From IMG/VR virus record IMGVR_UViG_3300019776_000324, positions 280,245 to 344,244 of that record: 64,000 nucleotides of DNA; one strand, given 5' to 3'. The notes beneath the pieces were generated by a model. It was not told the DNA's origin. It did no database searches and worked only from the letters and a program-made list of their open reading frames with translations. The translations under genes and the position numbers were made by a program. Of the stretch, positions 42,972-60,775 are shown piece by piece (positions within the stretch are counted from its first letter, which is position 1; each line of letters opens with the position of its first letter).

Positions 42972-42987
42972 CTTATAAGTAATTATA

Positions 42988-43340
42988 GTTTCGCATTTTA
43001 GTAAAAATGCGTGGTGGGTCGGGCTTTAAAGAATTGTTGTAATTCCTTCGTAGGGAAGGCGCTGTGGACCCGGGTTCGATACCCGGCATCTCCACCGAAA
43101 GGTATTAGGTTAGTATTTTTCGGTGGGGATGAAATGGATTCGACATGGTGAGATACTGAAAGAGGCAACACGGTAGGCGATGACCGTAAATCAAGCAAAT
43201 CTCGTAAATGCAAAAGCATCTACAGGCGAAGTAACTGTTTCAGGCAAGAGCGTTAAGTTCTCTGCTCGTACAGCGAAAGCTTCTTTAGCAGTTTAATCAC
43301 TGCTTAGGGTAGGAAATACCTCGTAACAGAAACAACCTAA
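42988..43340 (+). ncRNA. ssrA: Circularly permuted (two-piece) tmRNA; tag AKASTGEVTVSGKSVKFSARTAKASLAV* at 43210-43296
   Basis: T-arm and CAUCUCCA (43070-43094) lie before the 5' end GGGGAUG (43125); acceptor stem with G3-U70; GGAUUCGAC; UAAAU-GCA resume context. Confidence 0.88.
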
Positions 43341-43366
43341 AACGGCACTTAATTGTGCCGTTTTTC
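43339..43366 (+). terminator. Intrinsic terminator after tmRNA
   Basis: AAAACGGCAC-TTAATT-GTGCCGTTTTT. Confidence 0.8.
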
Positions 43367-43411
43367 TTGACAAAAACATTTTATAGTATATACTTAGACA
43401 GTATAAATAAT
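43367..43411 (+). promoter_or_regulatory. sigma70 promoter followed by a TATAAATA late promoter
   Basis: TTGACA-16-TATACT; TATAAATA at about 43403. Confidence 0.5.
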
Positions 43412-50017: not shown

Positions 50018-50101
50018 GGAGTGGAAGCATCAATGGTGATGCACTGGACTGTAAATCCGGCGCCTACGGCACGACTGGTTCGATCCCAGTACACTCCACC
50101 A
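50018..50101 (+). tRNA. tRNA-Tyr(GTA)
   Basis: Cloverleaf with long variable arm; CCA. Confidence 0.9.
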
Positions 50102-50109
50102 ACAGATAA

Positions 50110-50188
50110 CTCGGTGTAGGAAAGTCTGGTTTAATCCGCCTGCTTTGGGAGCAGGAGAGCGAAGGTTCGAATCCTTCTACCGAGACCA
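50110..50188 (+). tRNA. tRNA-Pro(TGG)
   Basis: Cloverleaf; CCA. Confidence 0.9.
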
Positions 50189-50194
50189 AAATTT

Positions 50195-50270
50195 GGGGTT
50201 GTAGCTCAGCTGGGAGAGCAACTGCTTTGCAAGCAGAAGGTCAGGGGTTCGATCCCCCTCTTCTCCACCA
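50195..50270 (+). tRNA. tRNA-Ala(TGC), two U-U mismatches in the acceptor stem
   Basis: G3-U70; CCA. Confidence 0.85.
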
Positions 50271-50393
50271 AATTGTAGTTGTGACGATGGTACTAAGTTG
50301 CTAGAAGCTTAGTCTGACGGCTGGTTAGGGATACACGGTGTCCGCGGTATAAGTGAACCAGAACTTCGAGTGCTGATAGGTAAGCTATCTACT

Positions 50394-50496
50394 ATATTGA
50401 AATACATTATTAAAGAGTGCTCTTGTCGGAGACACACTCTTATCTGGACCGACAACTTCCGGGCGTAGCGCCGTTACGTTTAGTGTGTTTCAATAT
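50394..50496 (+). repeat. Long-stem hairpin element B
   Basis: ATATTGAAATACATTA...TAGTGTGTTTCAATAT, 16 bp with G-U pairs. Confidence 0.6.
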
Positions 50497-50504
50497 GGTA
50501 ATAT

Positions 50505-50581
50505 GTATCGCATCGTCTAAGGAAGGATACGGGACAGCACGAGCCCTAGATGTAGGTTCAAGTCCTACTGTAGATACACCA
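50505..50581 (+). pseudogene. Degenerate tRNA-like element (anticodon unclear, possibly Arg ACG)
   Basis: Intact T-arm and ACCA end; disrupted anticodon and acceptor stems. Confidence 0.5.
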
Positions 50582-50752
50582 TACACATAAACATTCCAAC
50601 AACAAACGGTAAGAGCAAATTAAAATTCCGTTGAGTTGTGCGAGGTCAATGTATTTGCTCTCCGATACCTCTGAGTGTTTAGTTGTATGGTATGACTCTG
50701 CTGGGTATGAATCAGATTCTCCGGTGGGTAAGTTACTGCCATACAATATTAT

Positions 50753-50830
50753 GCAACGGTGGCAGAGAGGCCCAATGCAAGGGACTGCAAATCCCTAAAA
50801 CCGTAGGTTCAAATCCTACCCGTTGCTCCA
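50753..50830 (+). tRNA. tRNA-Cys(GCA)
   Basis: Cloverleaf; U73; CCA. Confidence 0.9.
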
Positions 50831-50832
50831 GG

Positions 50833-50861
50833 TTGACATAGACACTAAAAGTCTATATAAT
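50833..50861 (+). promoter_or_regulatory. Consensus sigma70 promoter within the tRNA array
   Basis: TTGACA-17-TATAAT. Confidence 0.8.
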
Positions 50862-50870
50862 AGTTTTATT

Positions 50871-50947
50871 GGTTTGTTAGATCAGTTGGTTAGATTGCCG
50901 CACTGTCACTGCGGAGGCCACGGGTTCGAGTCCCGTACAGACCGCCA
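50871..50947 (+). tRNA. tRNA-Asp(GTC)
   Basis: Cloverleaf; CCA. Confidence 0.92.
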
Positions 50948-50954
50948 AGTTTTT

Positions 50955-51030
50955 GCTCTCATCGTCTAGAGGCCTAGGACACCGCCCTTTCACGGCGGGT
51001 ACACGAGTTCGAATCTCGTTGAGAGCGCCA
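50955..51030 (+). tRNA. tRNA-Glu(TTC)
   Basis: Cloverleaf; CCA. Confidence 0.92.
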
Positions 51031-51037
51031 GTACTAT

Positions 51038-51111
51038 CGCGGGTTGGAGAAGGAGTATCTCGAGGGTCTCATAAGCCCTAGTCTCTGGTGCGATTCCAGA
51101 ACCCGCAACCA
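51038..51111 (+). tRNA. tRNA-fMet(CAT), initiator-type
   Basis: C1:A72 mismatch; CAU anticodon. Confidence 0.85.
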
Positions 51112-51119
51112 GTATCAAT

Positions 51120-51194
51120 TCCCCGTTAGCTCAGCGGTAGAGCAGCAGACTGTTAATCTGTTGGTCCCTGGTTCGATCCCAGGATGGGGAGCCA
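51120..51194 (+). tRNA. tRNA-Asn(GTT)
   Basis: Cloverleaf; CCA. Confidence 0.92.
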
Positions 51195-51201
51195 GTATTA
51201 C

Positions 51202-51291
51202 GGAAATGTGGCAGAGCCCGGTTGATTGCAACAGTCTTGAAAACTGTCGACTGTAAAAGGTCCGTGAGTTCGAATCTCACCGTTTCCGCCA
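51202..51291 (+). tRNA. tRNA-Ser(TGA)
   Basis: Long variable arm; G73. Confidence 0.9.
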
Positions 51292-51380
51292 AGTTTCGCC
51301 CATAACGGATTTGACTAACTCGCCTCTCTAGCCTTGTGCAATATGATTGGAAGTGATCGAAGGAGTAAGTCACAGAATTT

Positions 51381-51468
51381 GGAAAATTGGCCGAGCGGTT
51401 AAGGCATCAGTTTGCTAAACTGACACTGAGTAATCGGTGGATAGGTTCGACTCCTATATTTTCCGCCA
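51381..51468 (+). tRNA. tRNA-Ser(GCT)
   Basis: Long variable arm; G73. Confidence 0.9.
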
Positions 51469-51474
51469 AACAAT

Positions 51475-51549
51475 GCAGGATTAATTCAGTGGTAGAATGT
51501 TTCGTTGCCAACGAAAATGTCATCGGTTCGAACCCGATATCCTGCTCCA
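51475..51549 (+). tRNA. tRNA-Gly(GCC)
   Basis: Cloverleaf; U73. Confidence 0.9.
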
Positions 51550-51553
51550 ATTT

Positions 51554-51629
51554 GGGTCTTTAGTGAAATGGATATCATATCGGTCTTCGAAACCGTAAGT
51601 TAGGGGTTCGAATCCTCTAGGACCCACCA
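51554..51629 (+). tRNA. tRNA-Arg(TCG)
   Basis: Cloverleaf; CCA. Confidence 0.88.
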
Positions 51630-51645
51630 TAACATAAGTAAAGGT

Positions 51646-52266
51646 ATGAAACAAGCACTAATATTAGGTTGTAGCCACGCTGCCGGAACCGAGATATTCC
51701 CAGATCCTGTTGATACTAAAAATCATAGTTATCCTGCAATAATAGCACAACACCTAGGATACACTGTCAACAATCAAGGAATAGCAGGTGGTAGTAACGA
51801 TGCTATGTTTCGTATCTTCGAAGAACAAAGATTAACACTCAACGAAAATGATATTGTTATAGCCTGCTGGTCTGGTTATACCCGAACAGAAATTTGGAAT
51901 GACGCAACTAATCGTTGGCAAGCTATTGCTCCTGGTAAGTCTGATGTTTATCCCGAGGAATACTTGAAGTATCAAGAACAATGGATAGTATATCATACCG
52001 ATTACCGTATTGGAAGATTGAATAAAATTAAAAATATTCTAGCGTTAAACTGCTTGGCCAATCAACAAAATATCAAAGTTATTAACATTGATAGTTTTTG
52101 GCCAGTTACAGATATGGTTTGGCCAGACGACATTTATTGGCCAGTTACAGATAACTTTTATAATTGGTGCAGTGAACAAAATTACCCTCACACAGACTGG
52201 GGACATTATTTTGAATCAGCACATGAAGAATTTGCAAAATTTGTAGTTAAGCATTTGCCCCGATAG
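51646..52266 (+). CDS. SGNH/GDSL-like hydrolase paralog 5
   Basis: LGCSH..G; YP; GIAGGSND...R; GHY. Confidence 0.55.
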   Translation: MKQALILGCSHAAGTEIFPDPVDTKNHSYPAIIAQHLGYTVNNQGIAGGSNDAMFRIFEEQRLTLNENDIVIACWSGYTRTEIWNDATNRWQAIAPGKSDVYPEEYLKYQEQWIVYHTDYRIGRLNKIKNILALNCLANQQNIKVINIDSFWPVTDMVWPDDIYWPVTDNFYNWCSEQNYPHTDWGHYFESAHEEFAKFVVKHLPR

Positions 52267-52283
52267 CTCAGTTGGTTAGAGCA
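52257..52283 (+). pseudogene. 5' fragment of a tRNA truncated at the HNH gene
   Basis: GCCCCGA-TA-GCTCAGTTGGTTAGAGC-A, then TAAATA; no 3' half found. Confidence 0.65.
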
Positions 52284-52310
52284 TAAATACATGCATACGG
52301 AGGTCTTACC

Positions 52311-52694
52311 ATGCCAATATCAACTTGTAAAAATTGTAGTGAAGAATTTAAGCACGGCTACACAAGCACAGGAGTCTATTGTTCTATAAAATGCACTAAA
52401 GAAGGACAACGCAAAGACAGACGACAAAATTTTCTCGAAGGGAAAATGGTTAATCGTGGACTAATGAAAGCGCATCTAGTAGACATATACGGATGGCAAT
52501 GTGCATGCTGTAAGGGGAAGACCTGGCAAGGTCAACTAATTCCACTAGAGCTAGATCATATTGACGGAAATGCTGGTGATAACAGGCCTGAAAATTTGAG
52601 ATTGTTATGTCCAAATTGCCATTCGCAGACGCCAACACATAAAGCAAAAAATAAAGGAAACGGAAGAGGCAGTAGAGGACTTCCGTGGTATTAA
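52311..52694 (+). mobile_element. Free-standing HNH homing-type endonuclease gene
   Basis: C..C zinc motifs; LELDHIDG...DN..ENLRLLCPNCH; SD GGAGG. Confidence 0.85.
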
Positions 52695-52695
52695 C

Positions 52696-52769
52696 AGCCG
52701 GTTAGTTAAATGGTATAACGGACGCTTGATAAGCGTTTATTACAAGTTCAATTCTTGTACTGGCTACCA
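52696..52769 (+). tRNA. tRNA-Ile(GAT)
   Basis: Cloverleaf; CCA. Confidence 0.85.
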
Positions 52770-52786
52770 GTAGTAAACAGCAATAT

Positions 52787-52860
52787 GAGTCTCTGGTATA
52801 ATGGCATTACATCGGTCTCCAAAACCGCAGATCGGGGTTCGATTCCCTGGAGATTCGCCA
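52787..52860 (+). tRNA. tRNA-Trp(CCA)
   Basis: Cloverleaf; G73. Confidence 0.88.
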
Positions 52861-52878
52861 ACTTAAAGAAAGAAGAAA

Positions 52879-53352
52879 ATGAAGTTCAATATTCCACACA
52901 TTAAACAATTTATAGAAGCGCAAGGTCCAAACACTCGTATCTATATTGGTGTGGATAGTGAACGAGTTCGAGGCGCTGACAAGCAATGGTATGCTGTATA
53001 TACTGCCGCTATTGTTGTACACATCAATGGTAACAATGGTTGTAAGTTATTTGGCGAAGTATCTCGTGAGCGTGACTATGATCGTGTAGATCGTCCTAAC
53101 ACTCGCTTGATGACCGAAGTGTATAAAGTAAGCGAACTATACTTGAAACTAGCAGAAGTATTGGAAGGCCGTGCTGTGGAAGTTCACTTGGATATTAACC
53201 CAGATGATCATCACGCTAGTAGCAATGTAGTGGCGCAGGCTATCGGTTATATTCGTGGCACTTGTAATGTAGAACCTTTGGTTAAGCCTCGTGCATTTGC
53301 CGCAAGTTATGCCGCAGACAGAATGAGAAGTTTGAAGGTTGCTAACGGCTAG
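52879..53352 (+). CDS. RNase H-like protein (YkuK/DUF458-like)
   Basis: IYIGVDS; RLMTEV; VEVHLDIN; AASYAAD. Confidence 0.7.
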   Translation: MKFNIPHIKQFIEAQGPNTRIYIGVDSERVRGADKQWYAVYTAAIVVHINGNNGCKLFGEVSRERDYDRVDRPNTRLMTEVYKVSELYLKLAEVLEGRAVEVHLDINPDDHHASSNVVAQAIGYIRGTCNVEPLVKPRAFAASYAADRMRSLKVANG

Positions 53353-53375
53353 CAACAGTGTTATAATAGTAGCAC

Positions 53376-53452
53376 GGGCCGGTAGCTCATTCGGTTAGAG
53401 CAGAGGACTCATAATCCTTTGGTGGAGTGTTCGAATCACTCTCGGCCCACCA
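53376..53452 (+). tRNA. tRNA(CAT), probably Ile2 (lysidine type)
   Basis: Body resembles bacterial Ile2 (GAGCAG..ACUCAUAAU..UUGGU). Confidence 0.8.
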
Positions 53453-53459
53453 GTATTAT

Positions 53460-53542
53460 GCCCCGTTGGTGGAATTGGTAGACACGCTGGTCTTAGAAGC
53501 CAGTGCTTAGGCGTGCGAGTTCGAGTCTCGCATGGGGCACCA
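53460..53542 (+). tRNA. tRNA-Leu(TAG)
   Basis: Leu-type D loop; variable arm. Confidence 0.9.
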
Positions 53543-53549
53543 GTAGCAT

Positions 53550-53635
53550 GCGAGTGTGGTGAAATAGGTAGACACGACAGACTTAAAATCTGTTCCTATA
53601 ACGGGGTGCCAGTTCGATTCTGGCCATTCGCACCA
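53550..53635 (+). tRNA. tRNA-Leu(TAA)
   Basis: Leu-type D loop; variable arm. Confidence 0.9.
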
Positions 53636-53703
53636 ATAATTTAGGAGTTGTTATGTACAAAAATGAAAAGGCCTTCCATCGATCGTAAATGATCGGAGGA
53701 AGT

Positions 53704-54030
53704 ATGAGCAGAACAAAAAGATTTAAACATGATAAATGGTTAATTAAAGAAAATCGTTTATTACAGGATTTTGAAAGAGTGAGCGGCACTTACACTTGGG
53801 TTTATGTTGACATAGATCCTACTAGTAAGGAAGCTCGTAAGCGTATAGCAAAACTACACAGTGATGCTAAAAAGGGAGTGATGCGTTGGCGTGGGCCAGG
53901 TTGGTTTGTCCACGAATATCATCAAGTTCCTTATCGCCAACAAGCTCGGCGTGAACTACATAAGTTCATGAAAAATCCTGATTATGAAGTACAAATACCG
54001 CGTAAGCCACATTTGACTTACTGGTATTAA
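53704..54030 (+). CDS. Hypothetical basic protein
   Basis: SD GGAGG before MSRTKRF. Confidence 0.6.
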   Translation: MSRTKRFKHDKWLIKENRLLQDFERVSGTYTWVYVDIDPTSKEARKRIAKLHSDAKKGVMRWRGPGWFVHEYHQVPYRQQARRELHKFMKNPDYEVQIPRKPHLTYWY

Positions 54031-54040
54031 CAGTTTCAAA

Positions 54041-54114
54041 GCGGGATTCGTAAAATGGTATTACCTTAGATTTCCAATCTAAAGTCAGGAGTTCGATTCT
54101 CCTATCCCGCTCCA
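54041..54114 (+). tRNA. tRNA-Gly(TCC)
   Basis: Cloverleaf; CCA. Confidence 0.9.
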
Positions 54115-54152
54115 CTACTCCGTCTTAAGGTTGGACGAAAACTAACCCCTAT

Positions 54153-54226
54153 TGAGCTATGGTGTAATGGCAACACTACGGATTTTGATTCCGTCATTCT
54201 AGGTTCGAGTCCTAGTAGCTCTGCCA
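54153..54226 (+). tRNA. tRNA-Gln(TTG)
   Basis: Cloverleaf; G73. Confidence 0.88.
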
Positions 54227-54279
54227 AACAACACGGCTCCCTTCTGTTGCTTAATTGAACAGCTAGGGAGTTCTTTTAT

Positions 54280-54354
54280 GCCTCGTTAGCTCAGGAGTAG
54301 AGCAGGACTCTTACAAAGTCAAGGTCGGTGGTGCGAAACCATCACGAGGCACCA
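54280..54354 (+). tRNA. tRNA-Val(TAC)
   Basis: Cloverleaf; atypical T loop UGCGAAA. Confidence 0.85.
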
Positions 54355-54370
54355 CTTATAAAGGAACTAT

Positions 54371-54601
54371 ATGTTTAAAGTATATTGGACGGATCACAGT
54401 AACACACCGCAGGGTATTTACACAAATACCTTAACAGGTGCGTTGCGACTTACTGAAGAAAAGCGTCAAGCTGGTTATACTTTTGTAACAATGGTTTCAG
54501 AAGATCCTAACAGTGTAGGTAAATCTGGAGTTGATAGTGTAGTAGATGGTAAGTTGCCCGATGGCGAAGATTATACTTGGATGATGAGGAGAACACAATG
54601 A
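54371..54601 (+). CDS. Hypothetical protein
   Basis: SD AAGGA. Confidence 0.6.
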   Translation: MFKVYWTDHSNTPQGIYTNTLTGALRLTEEKRQAGYTFVTMVSEDPNSVGKSGVDSVVDGKLPDGEDYTWMMRRTQ

Positions 54602-54978
54602 AGATAACTGAAGATCAATTTAGATACGAATGGTTTTCTGGCACCGGTAAAGGAGGACAGCATCGTAACAAGCATCAAAATTGTTGTCGTTGCGTTCATG
54701 TGCCTACTGGAATTACTGCCAACGGCACTAATAGTCGCAGTCGCGAAGACAATAAGGCAAATGCCCGAGCAGTATGTCTAGCTCGTGTTGGGCGCTACTT
54801 CCACAAAGATACAGAACGATTCCGTGCTACAAACGAAAGAGTGAGAACTTATCATGCTGTTGACAACATAGTATATGATCATGCCAGTGGCGAGAAAGAT
54901 ACCTATCAAAATGTTGTTACCAAAGGCAACATTGATCACTTAATCGAGGCAAGAGCAAAGACCGTAGGAGGCAAATAA
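54598..54978 (+). CDS. GGQ peptidyl-tRNA hydrolysis domain protein (ArfB/PrfH-like)
   Basis: FSGTGKGGQHRNK..C.R..HVPTGI....SRS..DN; no codon-recognition domain. Confidence 0.85.
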   Translation: MKITEDQFRYEWFSGTGKGGQHRNKHQNCCRCVHVPTGITANGTNSRSREDNKANARAVCLARVGRYFHKDTERFRATNERVRTYHAVDNIVYDHASGEKDTYQNVVTKGNIDHLIEARAKTVGGK

Positions 54979-55370
54979 TGAGATTTTATGCGGTAGGTAA
55001 CATGTACCTAAGTTCAATACAACAAGGAATACAGGCTGCACACTGCGTGGGCGAAATGGCCTTGAAGATTCTTGGCAACAAGTTAGTCAGTGAATGGTTA
55101 CATACACACAAGACATTAATTTGTCTTAACGGTGGCAATAACAAATCACTAAATGACTTTTATGATTTAGTAAGATATCAAAGTCAATTCCCTGTGGCTA
55201 AGTTTCATGAAGATGAAGAAAGTCTTGGCGGTGTATTGACTTGTGTTGGTATTATTGTACCCAAAGAGATTTATGAAGCAGATTTAGATGATCCTTATCT
55301 TGTAGATAGACTAGGATCAGATGGATTTGAAATTGCTAGAGCACTGAAATCAATGCCCTTAGCAAGATAA
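54978..55370 (+). CDS. Peptidyl-tRNA hydrolase 2 (Pth2)-like protein
   Basis: QQGIQAAH; W....K.LICL.G; F.ED...L....T.VG. Confidence 0.65.
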   Translation: MRFYAVGNMYLSSIQQGIQAAHCVGEMALKILGNKLVSEWLHTHKTLICLNGGNNKSLNDFYDLVRYQSQFPVAKFHEDEESLGGVLTCVGIIVPKEIYEADLDDPYLVDRLGSDGFEIARALKSMPLAR

Positions 55371-55446
55371 GCACCCTAAGCTAACCTGGTGGAAGCGTAT
55401 GCCTGAAGAGCATGAGGGCTTGGTTCGAAACCAAGAGGGTGCACCA
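55371..55446 (+). tRNA. tRNA-Phe(GAA)
   Basis: Cloverleaf; CCA. Confidence 0.88.
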
Positions 55447-55448
55447 AA

Positions 55449-55538
55449 GCCCGGGTGGCGAAATCGGTAGACGCACTTCTCTCAAAAGGAAGAAGGAAAA
55501 ACACCTAGTTGTGAGTTCGAATCTCATCCCGGGCACCA
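55449..55538 (+). tRNA. tRNA-Leu(CAA)
   Basis: Leu-type D loop; variable arm. Confidence 0.88.
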
Positions 55539-55539
55539 C

Positions 55540-55613
55540 GCTCTCATAGTATAATGGCATTACACTACATTGGTAATGTAGAAACTCTGGATCGTAACCA
55601 GGTGAGAGCACCA
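55540..55613 (+). tRNA. tRNA-Thr(GGT)
   Basis: Cloverleaf; atypical T loop AUCGUAA. Confidence 0.8.
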
Positions 55614-55619
55614 AACAAT

Positions 55620-55695
55620 GGTGCAGTTAGTGTAGAGGTTAGCACCCCGGATTGTGATTCCGTTAGCATGGGTTCGAATCCCATACAGCACCCCA
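55620..55695 (+). tRNA. tRNA-His(GTG)
   Basis: Encoded G-1 opposite C73. Confidence 0.88.
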
Positions 55696-55697
55696 GA

Positions 55698-55726
55698 TTG
55701 ACAAATAAACCCATTTCGGGTATAAT
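55698..55726 (+). promoter_or_regulatory. Consensus sigma70 promoter (copy 1)
   Basis: TTGACA-17-TATAAT; near-identical to 57361. Confidence 0.85.
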
Positions 55727-55754
55727 GTAGTATAAACTAAGAAAGGAGCAAGCA

Positions 55755-56054
55755 ATGAAAGTAGTCAAATTAGACAAGCGTCATCGCTTGTTTCGTCGAG
55801 GTATGACCCATGCTTTTCGATTTGAAAACGATTGGATTAACCAACGCCTAGTAGAAAATACTCTAACTGATATGTATGGCTGGGGATATGGTAATCGTAA
55901 CTGGGATACCTTCCGCGGTAAAGTTAAAATCAATCGCGATAGTCGTGGATTGTACGACAGCCGTGTTCATACCTATTGGATAGGTGTTCGTAATGAAGCA
56001 GATCTAACCATGATCATGCTTCGAGTTAATTTACAAGACAAGGAGATATCGTGA
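55755..56054 (+). CDS. Hypothetical protein
   Basis: SD AAGGAG. Confidence 0.6.
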   Translation: MKVVKLDKRHRLFRRGMTHAFRFENDWINQRLVENTLTDMYGWGYGNRNWDTFRGKVKINRDSRGLYDSRVHTYWIGVRNEADLTMIMLRVNLQDKEIS

Positions 56055-56497
56055 GTGAGTTGAATAAACTTATTGGAAAACGCATTAACGGCATTTTCCT
56101 AAACGAAGACAATACTGTGGTAGTGTTTCGCACTATTGAAGACGAACGCATTGCCTTCTATACTCACGGTGATTGTTGCAACACTGTGTACATCAATCAC
56201 TTTCAAGGGCGTGATGTAGTCGGTGAAGGCAATGCTTTTGATTTGTTGCGTGGTGCTCTTGTTACTGCGGTAGAAGAAAAAGAGTGGGTAGCAATTGATG
56301 ACGACGAAACTGAGTATGACGATGATTCATATGGTGGTGGTTGTGTAGAGGATGGTTTCTTTACCATACGCACTAACCGCGGCTACATTGATTTTGAAGT
56401 GCGTAACGAGCACAATGGCTACTACAGTGGTCACTTGAGTGATTGGGATGATGAGATAGATTTGGCTACTCTGCGTCCATTAACAGAAGATTTTTAA
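56051..56497 (+). CDS. Hypothetical acidic protein
   Basis: SD AAGGAG; DCC..YI; EHNGYYSG. Confidence 0.6.
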   Translation: MSELNKLIGKRINGIFLNEDNTVVVFRTIEDERIAFYTHGDCCNTVYINHFQGRDVVGEGNAFDLLRGALVTAVEEKEWVAIDDDETEYDDDSYGGGCVEDGFFTIRTNRGYIDFEVRNEHNGYYSGHLSDWDDEIDLATLRPLTEDF

Positions 56498-56507
56498 GGA
56501 GATAACG

Positions 56508-56858
56508 ATGTCATTATATAATATGTTGTTTGGTATGAATCCAGACGCAGACAAGCTATTGTCTCTTTTGGATGCTACACAGGAGGACTTTGGTCGCTTT
56601 CGTAATGTTTACATGGAAGATGGTTATATCGTTGTTCACACTCGTTGTGGTGGTGGCAATCGAGAAGATTACTTTCCAGACTGGGTCGAGGACCATCCGT
56701 GGTATAGTCATGACGCAGATCAAGATTTTGACTGCACTTATGCAGACATCTACTTCAAGTTGCCCGAGGACAAGTATAAGACTTTTGCGTCTTTGCTTGA
56801 CCCAGGTGCTAATCCAGAAGAGCAATGGAGTAGTTTGCTAAAAGAGTTGAAGACTTAA
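56508..56858 (+). CDS. Hypothetical protein
   Basis: SD AAGGAG; HTRCGGGNRE. Confidence 0.6.
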   Translation: MSLYNMLFGMNPDADKLLSLLDATQEDFGRFRNVYMEDGYIVVHTRCGGGNREDYFPDWVEDHPWYSHDADQDFDCTYADIYFKLPEDKYKTFASLLDPGANPEEQWSSLLKELKT

Positions 56859-56920
56859 AACAGACCCCGCTTTGTCTAGTGTGCGATAACACTAGCACCA
56901 ACTAACTAAGGAGAAGTAAA

Positions 56921-57103
56921 ATGAAGCAAAGAAACATATATGCCGTATTGGCAAGTAAGAGGAAGGCGGGCTCGCACCGCAAGAGCAATAAAGCTCTAAG
57001 AAAATTAGCTAAACAGACGGGGTATGGTGAAAAGGTATCACATGGCACTTTTAATGCTTCGTTCAAGGTTCAAGTCCTTGTGCCCCGACCAAGTTTATAT
57101 TAA
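56921..57103 (+). CDS. Small basic peptide whose frame runs through tRNA-Lys
   Basis: SD AAGGAG; MKQRNIYAVLASKRKAGSHRKSNKALRKLAKQ; first stop lies after the tRNA. Confidence 0.55.
   Translation: MKQRNIYAVLASKRKAGSHRKSNKALRKLAKQTGYGEKVSHGTFNASFKVQVLVPRPSLY
57018..57091 (+). tRNA. tRNA-Lys(TTT)
   Basis: Cloverleaf; CCA. Confidence 0.85.
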
Positions 57104-57201
57104 AACACACTAAAATACATGGTCCGTCTTATTGGGCATCGCGGATCGAAGACATGGCATGTAAATGCAAAAATGGTTGCCTTAGTGTGTTTTAATATAA
57201 A
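57094..57201 (+). repeat. Long-stem hairpin element C
   Basis: TTTATATTAAAACACACTAA...TTAGTGTGTTTTAATATAAA, perfect 20-bp arms. Confidence 0.7.
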
Positions 57202-57276
57202 CTGCCCTTAGTACAACGGATAGTACAATCGGCTTCTACCCGATAAATGTGAGTTCGATTCTTGCAGGGCAGGCCA
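57202..57276 (+). tRNA. tRNA-Arg(TCT)
   Basis: Cloverleaf; CCA. Confidence 0.88.
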
Positions 57277-57281
57277 AATAC

Positions 57282-57358
57282 GGAAATGTAGCATAGTGGC
57301 TTAATGCAGTTGCTTCATACGCAACCTACCGTAGGTTCGAATCCTACCATTTCCACCA
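57282..57358 (+). tRNA. tRNA-Met(CAT), probably elongator
   Basis: Paired G1-C72; CAU anticodon. Confidence 0.82.
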
Positions 57359-57360
57359 GA

Positions 57361-57389
57361 TTGACAAATAAACCCATTTAGGGTATAAT
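57361..57389 (+). promoter_or_regulatory. Consensus sigma70 promoter (copy 2)
   Basis: TTGACA-17-TATAAT. Confidence 0.85.
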
Positions 57390-57419
57390 GTTTTATTAAC
57401 TTAGAGAAAGGAGCACGAT

Positions 57420-58607
57420 ATGGAAAATGTAAAAATGTGGGTAGGCGACATGGAAGTTGAGCGTGCTGCCTTGGATCAAATTCGCAATATTAGTCAATTA
57501 CCGATACTAGCCGGGCATATGGCTGTCATGCCAGATGTGCATATGGGCAAAGGTGCCACTGTGGGCTCGGTTATTCCTACTCGTGGTGCAATTATTCCTG
57601 CAGCAGTTGGTGTTGACATTGGGTGTGGTATGTGTGCTGTTATGACCAATTTGGTCGCCAGTGACCTGCCAGATTCTCTACACTCATTACGAAACTCTAT
57701 CGAGCGTGGTGTACCTGTTGGGTTTAACGAACACTCTCGTAGTTCTGTCAAGGTTAAAGGTGCAACTGCTGATAAATTGCGTCAAGCCGAAACCAAAATG
57801 TTTCAACGCTGGGAAAAACTGGCACTACGAGACAAATTGGGTCGTGCTGACCCATACAAAATTGCCAATCAAATTGGTACATTGGGCGGCGGCAATCATT
57901 TCATTGAAATCTGTTTAGATTTGGAAGATCGTGTTTGGGTTATGTTGCATTCGGGTTCGCGTGGTATCGGTAATCAAATCGGTACTGTGGCCATTAATAT
58001 GGCTAAAGAAATTGCTGTTCGCGAACAACGCAAGTTGGTTGACATGGACCTGGCATGGTTAGATGAAGGTACTGCTGAATTTAATGCTTATATCGAAGCC
58101 ATGCACTGGGCTCAGGATTATGCTATGCTTAATCGTGACACCATGATGCAGATTGTTTTACAAAACTTACGCCATATGTTTCCTAAGATGAAAACACTTG
58201 GTGAAATCGTAAATGCTCACCATAACTTTACTAACTTTGAGCAACACTTTGGTGAAGGTATGTGGATTACTCGTAAAGGTGCAGTATCTGCTCGTGAAGG
58301 ACAGATGGGTATTATTCCTGGTTCAATGGGTGCTAAATCATTCATTGTGCAAGGCAAGGGCAATGCTGACTCTTACTGTTCTTGTAGTCACGGTGCTGGT
58401 CGCAAGTACAGCCGCACAGGTGCTAAAAAGTTTTTCAACTTGGACGACTTAGCAACACAGACCGCCGGTGTTGAGTGTCGTAAAGATGAAGGCGTACTGG
58501 ACGAAATTCCGGGCGCTTACAAAGACATTGACCAAGTCATGGCAGCCCAGGCTGATCTAGTTAACATCGTACATACCTTGAAACAAGTTATGTGCATCAA
58601 AGGATAA
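57420..58607 (+). CDS. rtcB: RNA 3'-phosphate/5'-OH ligase RtcB
   Basis: MPDVH.G.G; VGVDIGCG; GTLGGGNHF; HSGSRG; HN; RKGA; PGSMG; HGAGR. Confidence 0.95.
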   Translation: MENVKMWVGDMEVERAALDQIRNISQLPILAGHMAVMPDVHMGKGATVGSVIPTRGAIIPAAVGVDIGCGMCAVMTNLVASDLPDSLHSLRNSIERGVPVGFNEHSRSSVKVKGATADKLRQAETKMFQRWEKLALRDKLGRADPYKIANQIGTLGGGNHFIEICLDLEDRVWVMLHSGSRGIGNQIGTVAINMAKEIAVREQRKLVDMDLAWLDEGTAEFNAYIEAMHWAQDYAMLNRDTMMQIVLQNLRHMFPKMKTLGEIVNAHHNFTNFEQHFGEGMWITRKGAVSAREGQMGIIPGSMGAKSFIVQGKGNADSYCSCSHGAGRKYSRTGAKKFFNLDDLATQTAGVECRKDEGVLDEIPGAYKDIDQVMAAQADLVNIVHTLKQVMCIKG

Positions 58608-58622
58608 TAGAAAGGAGGCACT

Positions 58623-59210
58623 ATGCCTAGTGTTTGGCTTACAAGCGATACGCACTTTGGTCACGAAGGTGTGTGCCGGTTTTTACAAGCAGATGGTGTG
58701 ACAAAACTTCGCCCGTGGACAGATCCAGCGGAGATGGATGAAGCCATGGTTGCGGCATGGAATGAACGGGTAGGACCAAAGGATAAAGTATATCACCTTG
58801 GTGATGTGGTTATTAATCGTCGGGCACTACCTATCCTAAACAGGCTTAACGGTGACAAAGTTCTTATCCGTGGTAATCACGATATTTTTAAGGACGAGGA
58901 TTACACTCCTTACTTTAGAAGTCTCAGAGCCTACCATGTCATGAATGGAATGATCCTCAGTCATATTCCTATTCATTCAGCTAGTCTCGGTCGTTTCGGA
59001 GTTAACATCCACGGACACTTACACGAAAAGCGTGTCATGCGTGATCTAGCTGTATGTGGGCGTTTGGATGTAGTTGATACCAGATACCATTGCGTATGCG
59101 TGGAGCAAACTCCAGACTTTGCACCTATCCTTTTTGAAGATGTTATCCAAAGAATCAAGGACGAAGGTGGTGTAGTTGGTTTTCAAAACGGTAATGGCCC
59201 TGCGATGTAG
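58623..59210 (+). CDS. Calcineurin-like metallophosphoesterase
   Basis: SDTHFGH; HLGD; GNHD; H.P; HGHLH. Confidence 0.9.
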   Translation: MPSVWLTSDTHFGHEGVCRFLQADGVTKLRPWTDPAEMDEAMVAAWNERVGPKDKVYHLGDVVINRRALPILNRLNGDKVLIRGNHDIFKDEDYTPYFRSLRAYHVMNGMILSHIPIHSASLGRFGVNIHGHLHEKRVMRDLAVCGRLDVVDTRYHCVCVEQTPDFAPILFEDVIQRIKDEGGVVGFQNGNGPAM

Positions 59211-59240
59211 TTGACAAACATGGCAGGGTCATGCTATAAT
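59211..59240 (+). promoter_or_regulatory. sigma70 promoter
   Basis: TTGACA-18-TATAAT. Confidence 0.65.
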
Positions 59241-59260
59241 ATACTTTTACAGGAGAAATC

Positions 59261-59485
59261 ATGAAACCAAGAATTGCAAGTCGTGGCCCAGGTATTGATA
59301 CTGAGGAATGTGTTCGACAAGCTGGTGGTGGCCGTTACGATCTAGTGTTAATTGGAGCCCAACGACTGCGCGAACTTAAACGCCAGCATCGCGAAAGTGG
59401 TCGCTATGTTACTCCTGTTGATGCGTTAATTGAGATTCAAGCAGGGCAAGTTAACCTAGCTGATTATCTAGCTAAAGTAAAATAA
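59261..59485 (+). CDS. RNA polymerase omega subunit-like protein
   Basis: RYDLVL.GAQR.REL..ALIEIQAG. Confidence 0.65.
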   Translation: MKPRIASRGPGIDTEECVRQAGGGRYDLVLIGAQRLRELKRQHRESGRYVTPVDALIEIQAGQVNLADYLAKVK

Positions 59486-59489
59486 GTTC

Positions 59490-60164
59490 ATGTACGATAT
59501 CTATGCTCTAGCTAGAGAGCGTAACGATTACTTAAAATTTACCACTACTGGCGATCATAAGATTGAAGTGTTTTATAAGATCGAACTAGACGGCGGTGGT
59601 ACTACTTTTGGGCAAGATTATTTGCCTGTAATTAAGGATCGTTACCCTGGCAGAGTTTTTGATAGAGCGTACGAGTGGTGTTCTGGTCCTGGATTCATTG
59701 GCTTTTCGTTACTGTCGCACGGAATATGTCGAACTGTTTGTTTGAGTGATTTGTATGATCCGTCAATCACAGCCGCAGAAGTTACTATTAACTTTGAACC
59801 AAACCAGTGCCAGGATCTAGCTACAGCGTATCTGTGTAAGGACCTGGGTCTTATACCCGAATATGAACAATTTGATTTAGTGGTCGCTAATCCGCCGCAC
59901 TTTAATGATGTTACTATGAATGACTACACTGGTATTAGAATTTCTAAAGATATCAACTGGACAGCGCATAGAAACTTTTTTAATAATATCAAGCGACATC
60001 TCGCCAAGGATGGTGTAATTTTATTACAAGAACATATCCATGGCGCTACAGTAGATGATTTGGCAGATATGATTAGTAACAATGGTTTAAAAATCACTGG
60101 CAATTTTCGTAGACCCAATGTTGACGAAACTGCTATGTATTATATTGAAATACAACATGCATAA
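59490..60164 (+). CDS. PrmC/HemK-like or N6-type methyltransferase
   Basis: EWCSGPGFIG; LSD; DLVVANPPHF. Confidence 0.7.
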   Translation: MYDIYALARERNDYLKFTTTGDHKIEVFYKIELDGGGTTFGQDYLPVIKDRYPGRVFDRAYEWCSGPGFIGFSLLSHGICRTVCLSDLYDPSITAAEVTINFEPNQCQDLATAYLCKDLGLIPEYEQFDLVVANPPHFNDVTMNDYTGIRISKDINWTAHRNFFNNIKRHLAKDGVILLQEHIHGATVDDLADMISNNGLKITGNFRRPNVDETAMYYIEIQHA

Positions 60165-60175
60165 GGAAAATTAAA

Positions 60176-60340
60176 ATGGCACAACCAAAACAAACAGCAA
60201 CAGAATTAAGTCGTACATTGGCAGGACAATGGTCTAAGAGTGAAAAGCGAGCAAAGGCAAGCCGTAGTATTATGGACTCTAATAAACGCACTCATGCCAT
60301 CAACAAGGCATTCAAACAGAATCAACTGTTAAATAAATAA
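60176..60340 (+). CDS. Hypothetical 54-aa basic protein
   Basis: SD AAGGA; MAQPKQTA...LLNK*. Confidence 0.5.
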   Translation: MAQPKQTATELSRTLAGQWSKSEKRAKASRSIMDSNKRTHAINKAFKQNQLLNK

Positions 60341-60347
60341 TGTAATA

Positions 60348-60440
60348 GGAGGGCTGGCCGAGCGGTCGAAGGCACCCGCCTACTAAGCGGGCATGGGTCT
60401 TAACAACTCATCTGGGGTTCGAATCCCTAGCCCTCCGCCA
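60348..60440 (+). tRNA. tRNA-Ser body with ACT anticodon
   Basis: CCCGC-CU-ACU-AA-GCGGG; long variable arm; G73; CCA. Confidence 0.85.
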
Positions 60441-60494
60441 AAATATTTCTTGTTGTAGCAGGCAAAATAAGTAGTAGACAACACAAGGAATATT

Positions 60495-60692
60495 ATGGCA
60501 ACCAAAAAAACATTACAAAGAAAAAAACCAGGCTTTACCAAAGCTGGTGTGGCTAAGATTGTTAGTATGAGCGTTAAACAACTAGTTACCGAATTAGATC
60601 GTACACAAAAGAACAAAGTCAAAGCCAAGATTCAACGCAGATTAAATCATTTTGGTTATGTAGCACCAGTAGTAGAAGCGGTAGCAGAATAA
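60495..60692 (+). CDS. Small basic hypothetical protein
   Basis: SD AAGGA. Confidence 0.55.
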   Translation: MATKKTLQRKKPGFTKAGVAKIVSMSVKQLVTELDRTQKNKVKAKIQRRLNHFGYVAPVVEAVAE

Positions 60693-60699
60693 GTTTCAA

Positions 60700-60775
60700 G
60701 CCCTTATAGCTCAGTTGGTAGAGCAACTGCTTTGTAAGCAGAAGGTCCGCGGTTCGAGTCCGTGTGAGGGCACCA
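60700..60775 (+). tRNA. tRNA-Thr(TGT)
   Basis: Cloverleaf; CCA. Confidence 0.92.

What the first reader, a model, noticed from the sequence alone, without database searches (positions are those of the whole stretch)
52257..52769. HNH endonuclease that truncated a tRNA and is followed by a divergent intact tRNA-Ile
Seen: a canonical tRNA 5' end (acceptor strand and D arm) stops abruptly at a TAAATA motif, followed by the HNH gene and, 1 nt after its stop, an AT-rich tRNA-Ile(GAU) of different sequence. No 3' exon follows, so this is not an intron. Known: free-standing endonucleases such as T4 SegB home within tRNA regions. Inference: the nuclease cuts the ancestral tRNA gene and carries a cleavage-resistant replacement.
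Basis: partly seen in the sequence, partly recalled or inferred. Interest (0 to 1): 0.6.

Follow-up and report, generated by a model that had tools for sequence, protein, structure and literature searches.

The report
HNH homing cassette with tRNA stub
A selfish nuclease gene in the tRNA cluster of a 344-kb freshwater phage is always linked to an isoleucine tRNA gene and sits behind the dead front end of an older tRNA gene, a layout that recurs in related phages and suggests such nucleases drive turnover of phage tRNA genes.

Summary
Window 52257-52283 is a perfect tRNA 5' part (acceptor strand plus D arm). It runs into CATAAATA, then a Shine-Dalgarno site and an intact 127-aa HNH gene (52311-52694). 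One base later comes a complete AT-rich tRNA-Ile(GAU) (52696-52769). There is no intron core and no 3' half anywhere in the genome.

Relatives settle most of the interpretation. All 8 close HNH homologues, in 8 different neighbourhoods, are followed within 1-5 nt by a tRNA-Ile(GAU). All carry the same left end: a D-arm remnant plus GAG[CT]ATAAATAC inside a hairpin that ends at or over the start codon. Two of them (L087, L090) also carry 5' stubs of tRNA-Ile. In L087 the stub sits exactly where HNH-less relatives have the intact gene. The same stub-HNH-tRNA layout occurs for Asn, Leu and Ser tRNAs, some with other HNH families.

So this is a free-standing homing-type HNH cassette with a T5 F-TflIV-like core that targets, or travels with, tRNA-Ile genes. 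The "cleavage-resistant replacement" idea is not supported. The AT-rich Ile also occurs without the HNH, and some homologues sit next to ordinary Ile alleles. It is a new variant of a known kind.

The parts
51554..51629 (+). tRNA-Arg(TCG), left anchor of the variable segment
   Evidence: ARAGORN and Rfam 61.8 bits. It is nearly identical in HNH-less relative L006, where the Ile gene follows after 2-3 nt. Metagenome contigs join its last base to the Ile gene.
51646..52266 (+). 206-aa ORF with a weak DUF6071 match. It is about 15 aa shorter at the C terminus than its homologues, and its last codons and stop lie inside the tRNA stub.
   Evidence: PF19547, E 8e-5, below cut-off. Homologues in L022, L025, L029 and L062 run about 15 aa further.
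52257..52283 (+). Dead 5' stub of a tRNA gene (positions 1-26/27: acceptor 5' strand plus D arm), most likely a former tRNA-Ile(GAU)
   Evidence: Sequence and Rfam truncated match to model positions 1-26. Among 1148 tRNAs of related loci, bases 8-27 are identical only in three Ile(GAU) genes, and the best relatives are 2 mismatches away. No 3' half exists in the genome.
52273..52311 (+). Predicted RNA hairpin. The 5' arm is the D-arm remnant. The loop holds the promoter-like box and the Shine-Dalgarno site. The 3' arm ends at the start codon.
   Evidence: -6.9 kcal/mol and z -0.5 in the window (weak). The same topology is strong in L085 (-15.5, z -4.9) and L087 (-14.5, z -4.4). Arm sequences differ compensatorily between loci.
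52282..52289 (+). CATAAATA, a box like a T4 late promoter (7 of 8 to TATAAATA). This is the 'TAAATA motif' of the finding.
   Evidence: GAG[CT]ATAAATAC occurs once in the 344-kb genome and, across 90 loci, only upstream of the HNH homologues. Of 27 [TC]ATAAATA sites in the genome, 19 precede an ORF start within 30 nt, against 13.5% for permuted 8-mers. A gp55-like late sigma factor is encoded.
52299..52303 (+). Shine-Dalgarno site GGAGG, 7 nt before the ATG
   Evidence: Sequence. A purine-rich site of this kind (variants GGAG, AGGT, AGGA) lies at this position in the homologues.
52311..52694 (+). HNH (His-Me finger) endonuclease gene, 127 aa, with an N-terminal CxxC...CxxxC zinc-ribbon-like part and an intact catalytic core
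   Evidence: Pfam and PHROG HNH families down to 3e-23. C64, C67, D82, H83, N95, C100, C103 and H104 are invariant in 7 homologues. The core is 48% identical to T5 HegA. Amino acids are conserved while third codon positions vary.
52696..52769 (+). Complete tRNA-Ile(GAU), AT-rich allele (D stem GTTA/TAAC, T arm ACAAG/CTTGT), CCA encoded
   Evidence: ARAGORN and Rfam 64.9 bits. G+C is 39%. The nearest allele is in HNH-less L053. An identical copy lies in another context in a metagenome contig.
52787..52860 (+). tRNA-Trp(CCA), right neighbour. Ile-Trp-RNaseH-like gene synteny is shared with L006, L007 and L010.

Best explanation
Window 52257-52769 is a free-standing homing-type HNH endonuclease cassette that lives in phage tRNA arrays and is specific for tRNA-Ile(GAU) genes.

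**The unit.** It consists of a short D-arm remnant, a late-promoter-like CATAAATA box with a Shine-Dalgarno site inside a hairpin that ends at the start codon, the HNH gene, and a complete tRNA-Ile(GAU) gene that starts 1-5 nt after the stop.

**Inferred mechanism.** The enzyme breaks an HNH-less tRNA-Ile gene in a co-infecting relative. Repair copies the HNH gene together with the Ile gene downstream of it. The donor has little or no homology upstream of the HNH, so the left end of the break (tRNA positions 1 to about 18-30) is joined illegitimately, or through the short D-arm homology. It stays behind as a dead stub. The 27-nt piece in the window is such a scar.

**Regulation, by analogy with T4 I-TevI, segB and Aeh1 mobE.** Read-through transcripts of the tRNA operon would fold the hairpin and hide the ribosome site. 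Late transcripts that start just after the box would lack the 5' arm and be translated.

**Shown:** the anatomy, the intact catalytic motif, the linkage to Ile, the patchy distribution, the stubs, the in-situ stub in L087, and the motif statistics.

**Inferred:** cleavage of tRNA-Ile DNA, the repair route, and the timing of expression.

**Open:** whether the window's stub was made in this genome or came with the cassette, and whether the downstream Ile is immune.
For: 1. HNH identity and integrity.
2. Eight of 8 homologues at 62-77% identity, and one at 42%, are followed by Ile(GAU) 1-5 nt after the stop. Upstream and downstream neighbours differ in every locus.
3. A cassette-specific left end, GAG[CT]ATAAATAC preceded by a D-arm remnant, occurs nowhere else in 90 loci or in the genome.
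4. Stubs of tRNA-Ile lie upstream of the HNH in L087 (positions 1-27, continuing to about 30) and L090 (positions 1-18). Each differs from the intact Ile behind it.
5. The L087 stub lies 7 nt after tRNA-Gln(TTG). In HNH-less L014 the intact Ile of the same type lies 6 nt after that tRNA.
6. HNH-less relatives L006, L007 and L010 have Arg(TCG)-Ile-Trp with no stub. Metagenome contigs also show Arg joined directly to Ile.
7. The same stub-HNH-intact-tRNA layout, with matching isotype, occurs for Asn (L154), Leu(TAG) (L163, L078) and Ser(TGA) (L028). L078 and L028 use other HNH families.
8. Within related arrays, the stub's bases 8-27 are found only in Ile(GAU) genes.
9. The hairpin is predicted in all homologues. 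The T4 precedent is described in PMC2988022. A late sigma factor is encoded and the promoter-like motif is enriched before ORF starts.
10. Endonucleases that cut tRNA genes and spread tRNA regions are known: SegB (PMC2330249), and the T5 F-Tfl HNH genes in the tRNA cluster.
Against: - No enzyme activity or cut site is known.
- The stub's isotype is inferred. The identical 27-mer begins Met(CAU) and Val(UAC) tRNAs in unrelated contigs.
- No relative with the intact 'ancestral' gene at this position was found.
- The junction between the upstream ORF and the stub is itself a rearrangement, so the stub need not be in situ.
- The window's own hairpin is weak (z -0.5).
- The HNH body had no coverage in the four runs laid, so the window's junctions lack independent read support.
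- ORFs in these arrays generally abut tRNAs, so close spacing alone means little.
- All relatives are metagenome assemblies.
Confidence: 0.6

Rival explanations
1. The cassette and nuclease are the same, but no replacement happened in this genome. The AT-rich tRNA-Ile was already resident next to tRNA-Arg(TCG). A block made of the truncated 206-aa ORF, the stub and the HNH was inserted in front of it. The stub is an old scar, or a left homology arm, carried along from an earlier locus.
For: - Contigs in freshwater runs join the last base of Arg(TCG) through 5-7 nt to an Ile gene of this AT-rich type (X5: same body, different acceptor 5' strand), with no ORF, stub or HNH between.
- The window's Ile is closest to the HNH-less allele of L053, not to the HNH-linked alleles of L085 or L090.
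- All cassettes carry their own D-arm remnant.
- The junction between the upstream ORF and the stub is a rearrangement.
Against: - Arg(TCG) followed by a homologue of the 206-aa ORF is an old adjacency (L022, L025, L029). The ORF need not be an import.
- In L087 the stub is demonstrably in situ.
- The X1 joint rests on only 27 nt of the Ile side.
Confidence: 0.25
2. The stub is ordinary decay of a tRNA array, a deletion remnant unrelated to the nuclease. The HNH gene merely sits in a permissive intergenic spot, and its neighbourhood with tRNA-Ile is inherited by descent.
For: - Orphan tRNA pieces occur elsewhere in these arrays without an HNH gene beside them, for example L004 4951-4976 and several 3' pieces.
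- ORFs of all kinds abut tRNAs in these compact arrays.
Against: - In seven modules the stub lies 27-52 nt before an HNH start. In the six whose stub isotype is clear it matches the intact tRNA behind the gene.
- Linkage to Ile is kept while both flanks change in 8 loci.
- The HNH is absent from the closest relatives.
Confidence: 0.08
3. The junctions are assembly chimeras caused by tRNA-like repeats in a metagenome-assembled genome.
For: - The record is a metagenome assembly.
- No contig in the four runs laid spans 52284-52557.
Against: - Sequence shared between the stub and other cassettes is at most 10-13 nt, too short to mislead an assembler.
- The same layout appears in independent assemblies from other samples (L087, L090, L154, L163, L028, L078).
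- The ORF, hairpin and spacing are coherent.
Confidence: 0.03
4. It is an interrupted or split tRNA gene: a group I intron carrying the HNH, or a two-piece tRNA whose halves are joined in trans.
For: tRNA genes of phages and cyanobacteria can carry group I introns. Intron-like split tRNA-Leu(UAA) genes occur in some related loci.
Against: - No intron model matched at E up to 10.
- The break is at position 26/27, not in the anticodon loop.
- No 3' half exists in the window or the genome.
- The downstream tRNA is complete and its acceptor stem does not fit the stub.
Confidence: 0.01

Closest known systems
T5 F-TflIV (HegA) and the other HNH genes of the T5 tRNA cluster (Akulenko et al. 2004, cited in PMC2330249 and PMC10644984)
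   Same: - Same enzyme superfamily and sub-type. The catalytic core is 48% identical to T5 HegA over 75 aa (E 4e-19).
- The genes are free-standing and lie inside a phage tRNA cluster.
- In T5 (hegC, hegD) and Serratia phage Slocum (TflIV-like), the ORF end overlaps the 5' end of a tRNA gene by 10-23 nt. Many homologues found here do the same.
   Different: - The protein is shorter (127 against 227 aa) and has a different N-terminal zinc-ribbon-like part.
- It is strictly linked to tRNA-Ile(GAU).
- It has a conserved D-arm remnant and hairpin at the left end.
- It has 5' tRNA stubs upstream. These features are not annotated in the T5 or Slocum records viewed, and I found no description of them in the papers I could search.
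T4 SegB (GIY-YIG homing endonuclease in the tRNA cluster; PMC2330249, PMC13096335)
   Same: - It works in the way proposed here. It is free-standing in the tRNA region, cuts tRNA genes of relatives that lack it, and drives inheritance of itself and neighbouring tRNA genes.
- It has a hairpin that hides the ribosome site together with a late promoter (PMC2988022).
   Different: - It belongs to a different nuclease family (GIY-YIG, not HNH).
- It recognises the T-arm motif shared by many tRNAs, not one isoacceptor.
- No tRNA stub or same-isotype replacement is described.
Intronless homing and gene-splitting HNH genes of T-even phages (SegF, MobE; PMC2988022, PMC2790892)
   Same: These are free-standing endonuclease genes that spread by break repair with co-conversion of flanking markers. 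They leave rearranged host genes behind and are under tight translational control.
   Different: The targets are protein genes. The host gene survives as two working pieces or unchanged, not as a dead stub plus a full second copy.
tRNA-gene fragments flanking integrated elements (integrase-mediated islands and prophages; own knowledge)
   Same: A mobile element next to a tRNA gene leaves a partial copy of the tRNA at one end and an intact gene at the other.
   Different: In those elements the duplicate is the 3' part, is identical to the gene, and is made by a site-specific integrase. Here it is the 5' part, differs from the intact gene, and lies next to an HNH nuclease with no integrase.
HNH genes in mycobacteriophage tRNA arrays (Pope et al. 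2014, as cited in PMC5966550 and PMC6409571)
   Same: HNH genes next to tRNA genes were implicated in the diversity of tRNA repertoires.
   Different: I could not read the original paper, so I do not know whether stubs or isotype-specific linkage were described. The hosts and phage lineage differ.

Membership tests
HNH / His-Me finger endonucleases | Significant match to the HNH profile | tested here: met
   PF13392 at 29.0 bits (cut-off 24.8) and PF01844 at 25.1 bits (cut-off 21.4). PHROG HNH families score down to 2.9e-23.
HNH / His-Me finger endonucleases | Catalytic D-H...N...H residues and the two CxxC zinc pairs are present | tested here: met
   C64, C67, D82, H83, N95, C100, C103 and H104 are invariant in 7 homologues.
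HNH / His-Me finger endonucleases | Metal-dependent DNA nicking or cleavage | not testable with these tools
   This needs purified protein.
Free-standing homing endonuclease genes | The nuclease ORF lies between genes, not inside an intron or intein | tested here: met
   No intron model matched. No 3' exon exists. The ORF has its own Shine-Dalgarno site and start.
Free-standing homing endonuclease genes | Patchy presence among close relatives at a syntenic site | tested here: met
   The gene is absent from L006, L007 and L010, which share the same Arg-Ile-Trp-RNaseH-like synteny. HNH-less joints exist in metagenome contigs.
Free-standing homing endonuclease genes | Cuts the endonuclease-less allele near the insertion site | not testable with these tools
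   The only evidence is indirect: stub end points at tRNA positions 18-30 in seven modules.
Free-standing homing endonuclease genes | Preferential inheritance in mixed infection | not testable with these tools
   No cultured phage or host is available.
T5 F-TflIV/HegA-like HNH | Sequence similarity over the whole protein | tested here: inconclusive
   The core is 48% identical over 75 aa (E 4e-19), but the lengths are 127 and 227 aa and the N-terminal parts do not align. Slocum's TflIV-like gene was hit by tblastn.
SegB / GIY-YIG homing endonucleases | GIY-YIG catalytic domain | tested here: not met
   Pfam finds only HNH domains. SegB is a functional analogue, not a family match.
tRNA gene with group I intron carrying an endonuclease | Intron RNA core and both exons are present | tested here: not met
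   The break lies at position 26/27, outside the anticodon loop.
tRNA (the stub at 52257-52283) | Complete cloverleaf | tested here: not met
   Only model positions 1-26 match. ARAGORN and Rfam call nothing there.
tRNA (52696-52769) | Complete cloverleaf above the curated score, with anticodon GAU | tested here: met
   Rfam scores 64.9 bits against a gathering score of 29. ARAGORN calls Ile(GAU).
T4-type late expression with a hairpin that hides the ribosome site | TATAAATA-like box, a gp55-type sigma factor in the genome, and a hairpin whose 5' arm lies upstream of the box | tested here: inconclusive
   The box matches 7 of 8 and the motif is enriched before ORF starts. A late sigma factor is encoded. 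The hairpin is strong in L085 and L087 but weak in the window. No transcript ends are known.

The most novel reading that the evidence does not exclude
Each lineage of these small HNH genes may be a gene drive aimed at one tRNA isoacceptor gene. It destroys the resident allele, leaving a 5' stub, and installs the allele it carries. Unusual alleles such as the AT-rich tRNA-Ile, with its re-paired D stem, would be immunity alleles that stay behind after the nuclease is lost. This would explain the extreme allele diversity and shuffling of tRNA genes in jumbo-phage arrays.
Probability: 0.25. Interest if true: 0.75.

Novelty: new variant of a known kind. Interest (0 to 1): 0.6.

Why it matters
Phage tRNA arrays are now seen as tools against host codon bias and against tRNA-cutting defences, yet little is known about how their gene content turns over. 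Homing endonucleases in tRNA clusters are known from T4 (SegB) and T5 (F-Tfl).

The layout found here is more specific. A nuclease lineage is tied to one isoacceptor. A complete tRNA gene starts at the nuclease's stop codon. The dead 5' end of a former tRNA gene lies in front. This recurs for Ile, Asn, Leu and Ser tRNAs and for more than one HNH family.

If the nucleases really cut the matching tRNA gene, they are a direct motor of tRNA allele replacement between co-infecting phages. The stubs would then be a readable record of past events. The stubs also matter for annotation, because they are neither genes nor introns. The enzymes may be a source of nucleases with tRNA-gene specificity.

Tried and rejected
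**Searches that found nothing useful**
- A search for relatives of the upstream 206-aa ORF, to find the intact ancestral tRNA behind it, found nothing in viral contigs or metagenome contigs.
- An exact search for the 27-mer gave 2 viral hits, both Met(CAU) in unrelated 60-80-kb phages. It gave 3 metagenome hits: Val(UAC) and two odd tRNA-like genes. None lies in a related array, so sequence identity alone cannot name the isotype.
- A DNA search of GenBank phages found only short HNH-core and tRNA-Trp matches.
- A profile search of the HNH against PDB sequences gave no hit.
- A sigma-70 promoter and terminator scan gave nothing above shuffles.

**Read mapping**
- The four runs hold mostly relatives. 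No contig covers the HNH body, so the window's junctions could not be confirmed and expression could not be assessed.

**Structure statistics**
- A formal covariation count on the hairpin was not made. The MAFFT alignment (A2) shifts the 3' arm by one column in half of the rows. I rely on the single folds and on arm sequences read.

**Literature**
- Pope et al. 2014 was not held. Akulenko et al. 2004, known to me only through citations, was not looked up. They are used only through citing papers.

**Readings rejected**
- The intron and split-tRNA readings.
- A simple "resistant D arm" rule. Four HNH-linked Ile genes have ordinary D arms, and L084's first 18 bases match the stub destroyed in L090.

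**Not run**
- No alternative genetic code was used.
- No structure prediction or complex prediction was run, because the family assignment did not need it.
Full report
**Setting.** The window is the last 64 kb of a 344,244-bp virus record with terminal repeats. It comes from a large family of freshwater jumbo phages: 317 related loci were found with the neighbouring RNaseH-like gene alone. From 50018 to 60775 the window holds an array of 29 tRNA genes. ARAGORN and Rfam adds a Tyr gene. The array is interspersed with small ORFs, an RF-1-domain protein, RtcB and a phosphoesterase. A tmRNA lies upstream.

- Bases 52257-52283 are a textbook tRNA 5' part: a 7-nt acceptor strand, U8 A9, a 4-bp D stem with loop AGTTGGTTA, and A26. 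Rfam aligns it to tRNA model positions 1-26 when the stretch is cut there.
- The similarity stops at 52283. CATAAATA (52282-52289), GGAGG (52299-52303) and the ATG of a 127-aa ORF (52311-52694) follow.
- The ORF passes Pfam's cut-offs for HNH_3 and HNH and matches PHROG HNH families down to 3e-23.
- One base after its stop begins a complete tRNA-Ile(GAU) (52696-52769; 64.9 bits). At 39% G+C it is the most AT-rich tRNA of the array.
- No intron model matches. No T arm plus acceptor strand fitting the stub exists in the window or the genome.
- The upstream 206-aa ORF (51646-52266) ends inside the stub, using its U8-A9-G10 TAG as stop.

**Relatives: linkage to tRNA-Ile.** Homologues of the HNH at 62-77% identity occur in seven other loci: L084, L085 (also fetched as L086 and L091), L087, L088, L089, L090 and L094.
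- In all of them, and in one at 42% (L112), a tRNA-Ile(GAU) gene starts 1-5 nt after the stop.
- Upstream neighbours differ in each case: Gln, His, Ile(TAT), Leu, Tyr, or ORFs.
- Downstream neighbours also differ: Trp, Asn, Arg, Ala, Ser, Asp.
- The conserved unit is therefore the HNH plus Ile, placed in different contexts.
- The protein is under selection. Catalytic and zinc residues are invariant. The last 21 residues are identical in the six closest homologues, L094 alone differing, while third codon positions vary as much as elsewhere.

**Relatives: a shared left end.**
- Every cassette has GAG[CT]ATAAATAC about 25-30 nt before the ATG. The motif occurs once in the whole genome and nowhere else in 90 loci.
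- The bases before it read like the 3' side of a tRNA D arm (GGTAAGAGCA, TGTAGAGCA and the like).
- This remnant forms the 5' arm of a hairpin whose 3' arm ends at or over the start codon. The loop holds the box, and the Shine-Dalgarno site lies in the loop's 3' side, in L088 partly paired.
- The arms change in a compensating way: AGAGCA/TGCTCT in L085 and L087, GTAGAGT/ACTCTAC in L090, GGTACGA/TCGTACC in L084.
- The fold is strong in L085 and L087 (z -4.9 and -4.4) but weak in the window (z -0.5).
- I could not run a formal covariation count. That part rests on single folds and on reading the arm sequences.

**The TAAATA motif.**
- [TC]ATAAATA occurs 27 times in the genome. Nineteen sites are followed within 30 nt by the ATG of an ORF of 60 aa or more, against 13.5% for the 55 permutations of the 8-mer.
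- The genome encodes a late sigma factor of the T4 gp55 type.
- In T4, the endonuclease genes I-TevI to I-TevIII, segB and (in Aeh1) mobE combine a late promoter with a hairpin that hides the ribosome site on earlier read-through transcripts (PMC2988022).
- The cassette has that layout. Its function here is inferred.

**Stubs elsewhere.**
- L087 has the first 27 bases (continuing to about 30) of a tRNA-Ile(GAU) before its cassette. L090 has the first 18. Each differs from the intact Ile behind the HNH.
- The L087 stub lies 7 nt after tRNA-Gln(TTG). In HNH-less L014 the intact Ile gene of the same type lies 6 nt after that tRNA. That is truncation in place.
- More distant homologues show the same layout: an Asn stub (positions 1-23), HNH and Asn gene in L154, and a Leu(TAG) stub (positions 1-24), HNH and Leu(TAG) gene in L163.
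- Two ORFs of other HNH types do so too. In L028 a Ser(TGA) stub (1-27) precedes an ORF at Pfam's HNH cut-off and a Ser(TGA) gene. In L078 a Leu(TAG) stub (1-29) precedes an ORF with weak matches to endonuclease models and a Leu(TAG) gene.
- That makes seven modules. The stub isotype matches the gene behind the nuclease in the six where it is clear.
- Orphan tRNA pieces also occur away from nucleases, so a full survey with controls is still needed.

**The window's stub.**
- Among 1148 distinct tRNAs of related loci, bases 8-27 of the stub are identical only in three Ile(GAU) genes. The two best overall matches among the related arrays (2 mismatches) are Ile(GAU).
- Outside the family, however, the same 27-mer begins Met(CAU) and Val(UAC) genes.
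- The closest HNH-less relatives (RNaseH-like protein 90, 83 and 76% identical) have Arg(TCG)-Ile-Trp with no stub and no 206-aa ORF. Their Ile genes differ from both the stub and the window's Ile.
- No relative with an intact gene of the stub's type at this place was found.
- The 206-aa ORF lacks about 15 C-terminal residues that its homologues have. Its junction with the stub is therefore a second rearrangement. The stub could have been made here or brought in with the cassette.

**The immunity idea.**
- The AT-rich Ile type is next to the HNH in three cassettes: the window, L085 and L090.
- It also occurs without any HNH in L053 and L078.
- In freshwater metagenome contigs, the last base of Arg(TCG) is joined through 5-7 nt to an Ile gene of this AT-rich type, and in X5 the acceptor 5' strand differs. 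One joint has only 27 nt on the Ile side.
- Four cassettes (L084, L087, L088/L089, L094) carry Ile genes with ordinary D arms. L084's first 18 bases match the stub destroyed in L090.
- So no simple sequence rule separates spared from destroyed alleles. Resistance is neither shown nor excluded.

**Comparison with known systems.**
- By sequence, the enzyme's core is closest to T5 HegA, which Slocum's annotation equates with F-TflIV (48% over 75 aa).
- In T5 and Slocum, HNH ORFs overlap the 5' ends of tRNA genes. Many homologues here do likewise, often ending on the tRNA's own TAG at positions 8-10.
- By mechanism, the nearest studied case is T4 SegB, a GIY-YIG enzyme that cuts tRNA genes at the T-arm motif and drives inheritance of the T4 tRNA region (PMC2330249). 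It is widely associated with tRNAs (PMC13096335).
- I found nothing in the searchable literature on isoacceptor-specific linkage, the conserved remnant-hairpin left end, or the 5' stubs with a complete same-isotype gene behind the nuclease. Two key papers could not be read.

**Verdict.** The finding is real and its core reading is right: a free-standing endonuclease that acts on tRNA genes and leaves a broken one behind. The "resistant replacement" part is unproven, and for this genome possibly wrong. I rate it a new variant of a known kind, of moderate to good interest. The recurrence across isotypes and nuclease families points to a general way in which phage tRNA arrays are remodelled.

Noticed in passing
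window 50018-50098 (+): A tRNA-Tyr(GUA) that ARAGORN missed. Rfam scores it at 36.5 bits and the anticodon loop reads CTGTAAA. With it, the array covers all 20 amino acids.
   Followed up: partly
window 60348-60440 (+): A 93-nt class II tRNA that ARAGORN calls Ser(ACT), an odd anticodon. ARAGORN makes the same call in relatives L034, L070, L075 and L076. I did not settle what it decodes and infer no code change.
   Followed up: no
window 42983-43387 (+): A phage-borne tmRNA. ARAGORN flags it as permuted, and Rfam matches both beta_tmRNA (129 bits) and tmRNA_permuted (127.5 bits).
   Followed up: no
window 54577-54978, 57420-58607, 58623-59210 (+): The tRNA array also holds an RF-1-domain protein (a ribosome-rescue type), an RtcB RNA ligase (E 7e-126) and a metallophosphoesterase. 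Together they look like a translation-repair island.
   Followed up: partly
whole genome; sigma factor at G000:C1:73389-74342 (outside the window): [TC]ATAAATA behaves as a gene-proximal motif of the T4 late-promoter type. Nineteen of 27 sites precede an ORF start within 30 nt, often by only 4-9 nt. The phage encodes a gp55-like late sigma factor (phrog_12791, 7e-72).
   Followed up: partly
window 51646-52266 (+): The 206-aa ORF has a weak DUF6071 match and no PHROG. It lacks about 15 C-terminal residues present in its homologues and borrows its last codons and stop from the tRNA stub.
   Followed up: partly
L126 1949-2219; L131 1940-2199; L157 746-1027; L158 1871-2152: The 5' and 3' halves of tRNA-Leu(UAA) lie about 200 nt apart, like a group I intron in the anticodon loop. 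Each lies about 50 nt upstream of a distant homologue of this HNH.
   Followed up: no
L087 3450-3560: A pile of 3' tRNA pieces (T arms with acceptor ends) lies directly after the cassette's intact Ile gene. This suggests repeated rearrangement at this spot.
   Followed up: no
L085 3468-3542 (= L086 3393-3467): A second Ile(GAT)-like gene lies directly after the cassette's Ile. Its anticodon loop is aberrant (C at position 33, T at 37). It may be a decaying resident copy.
   Followed up: no
L179 (phage T5, NC_005859 26000-46000); L177 (Serratia phage Slocum): In T5, hegC overlaps the 5' end of tRNA-Ser2 by 14 nt and hegD overlaps a pseudo-tRNA-Gln2 by 23 nt. In Slocum a TflIV-like HNH overlaps tRNA-Leu by 10 nt. 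T5 also lists several 'tRNA-like stable RNAs' in the cluster that may be old tRNA pieces.
   Followed up: partly
window 51038-51111 (+): An initiator-like tRNA (CAT anticodon, C1 opposite A72, GGG/CCC in the anticodon stem). ARAGORN calls it, but it is missing from Rfam's list at the gathering score.
   Followed up: no
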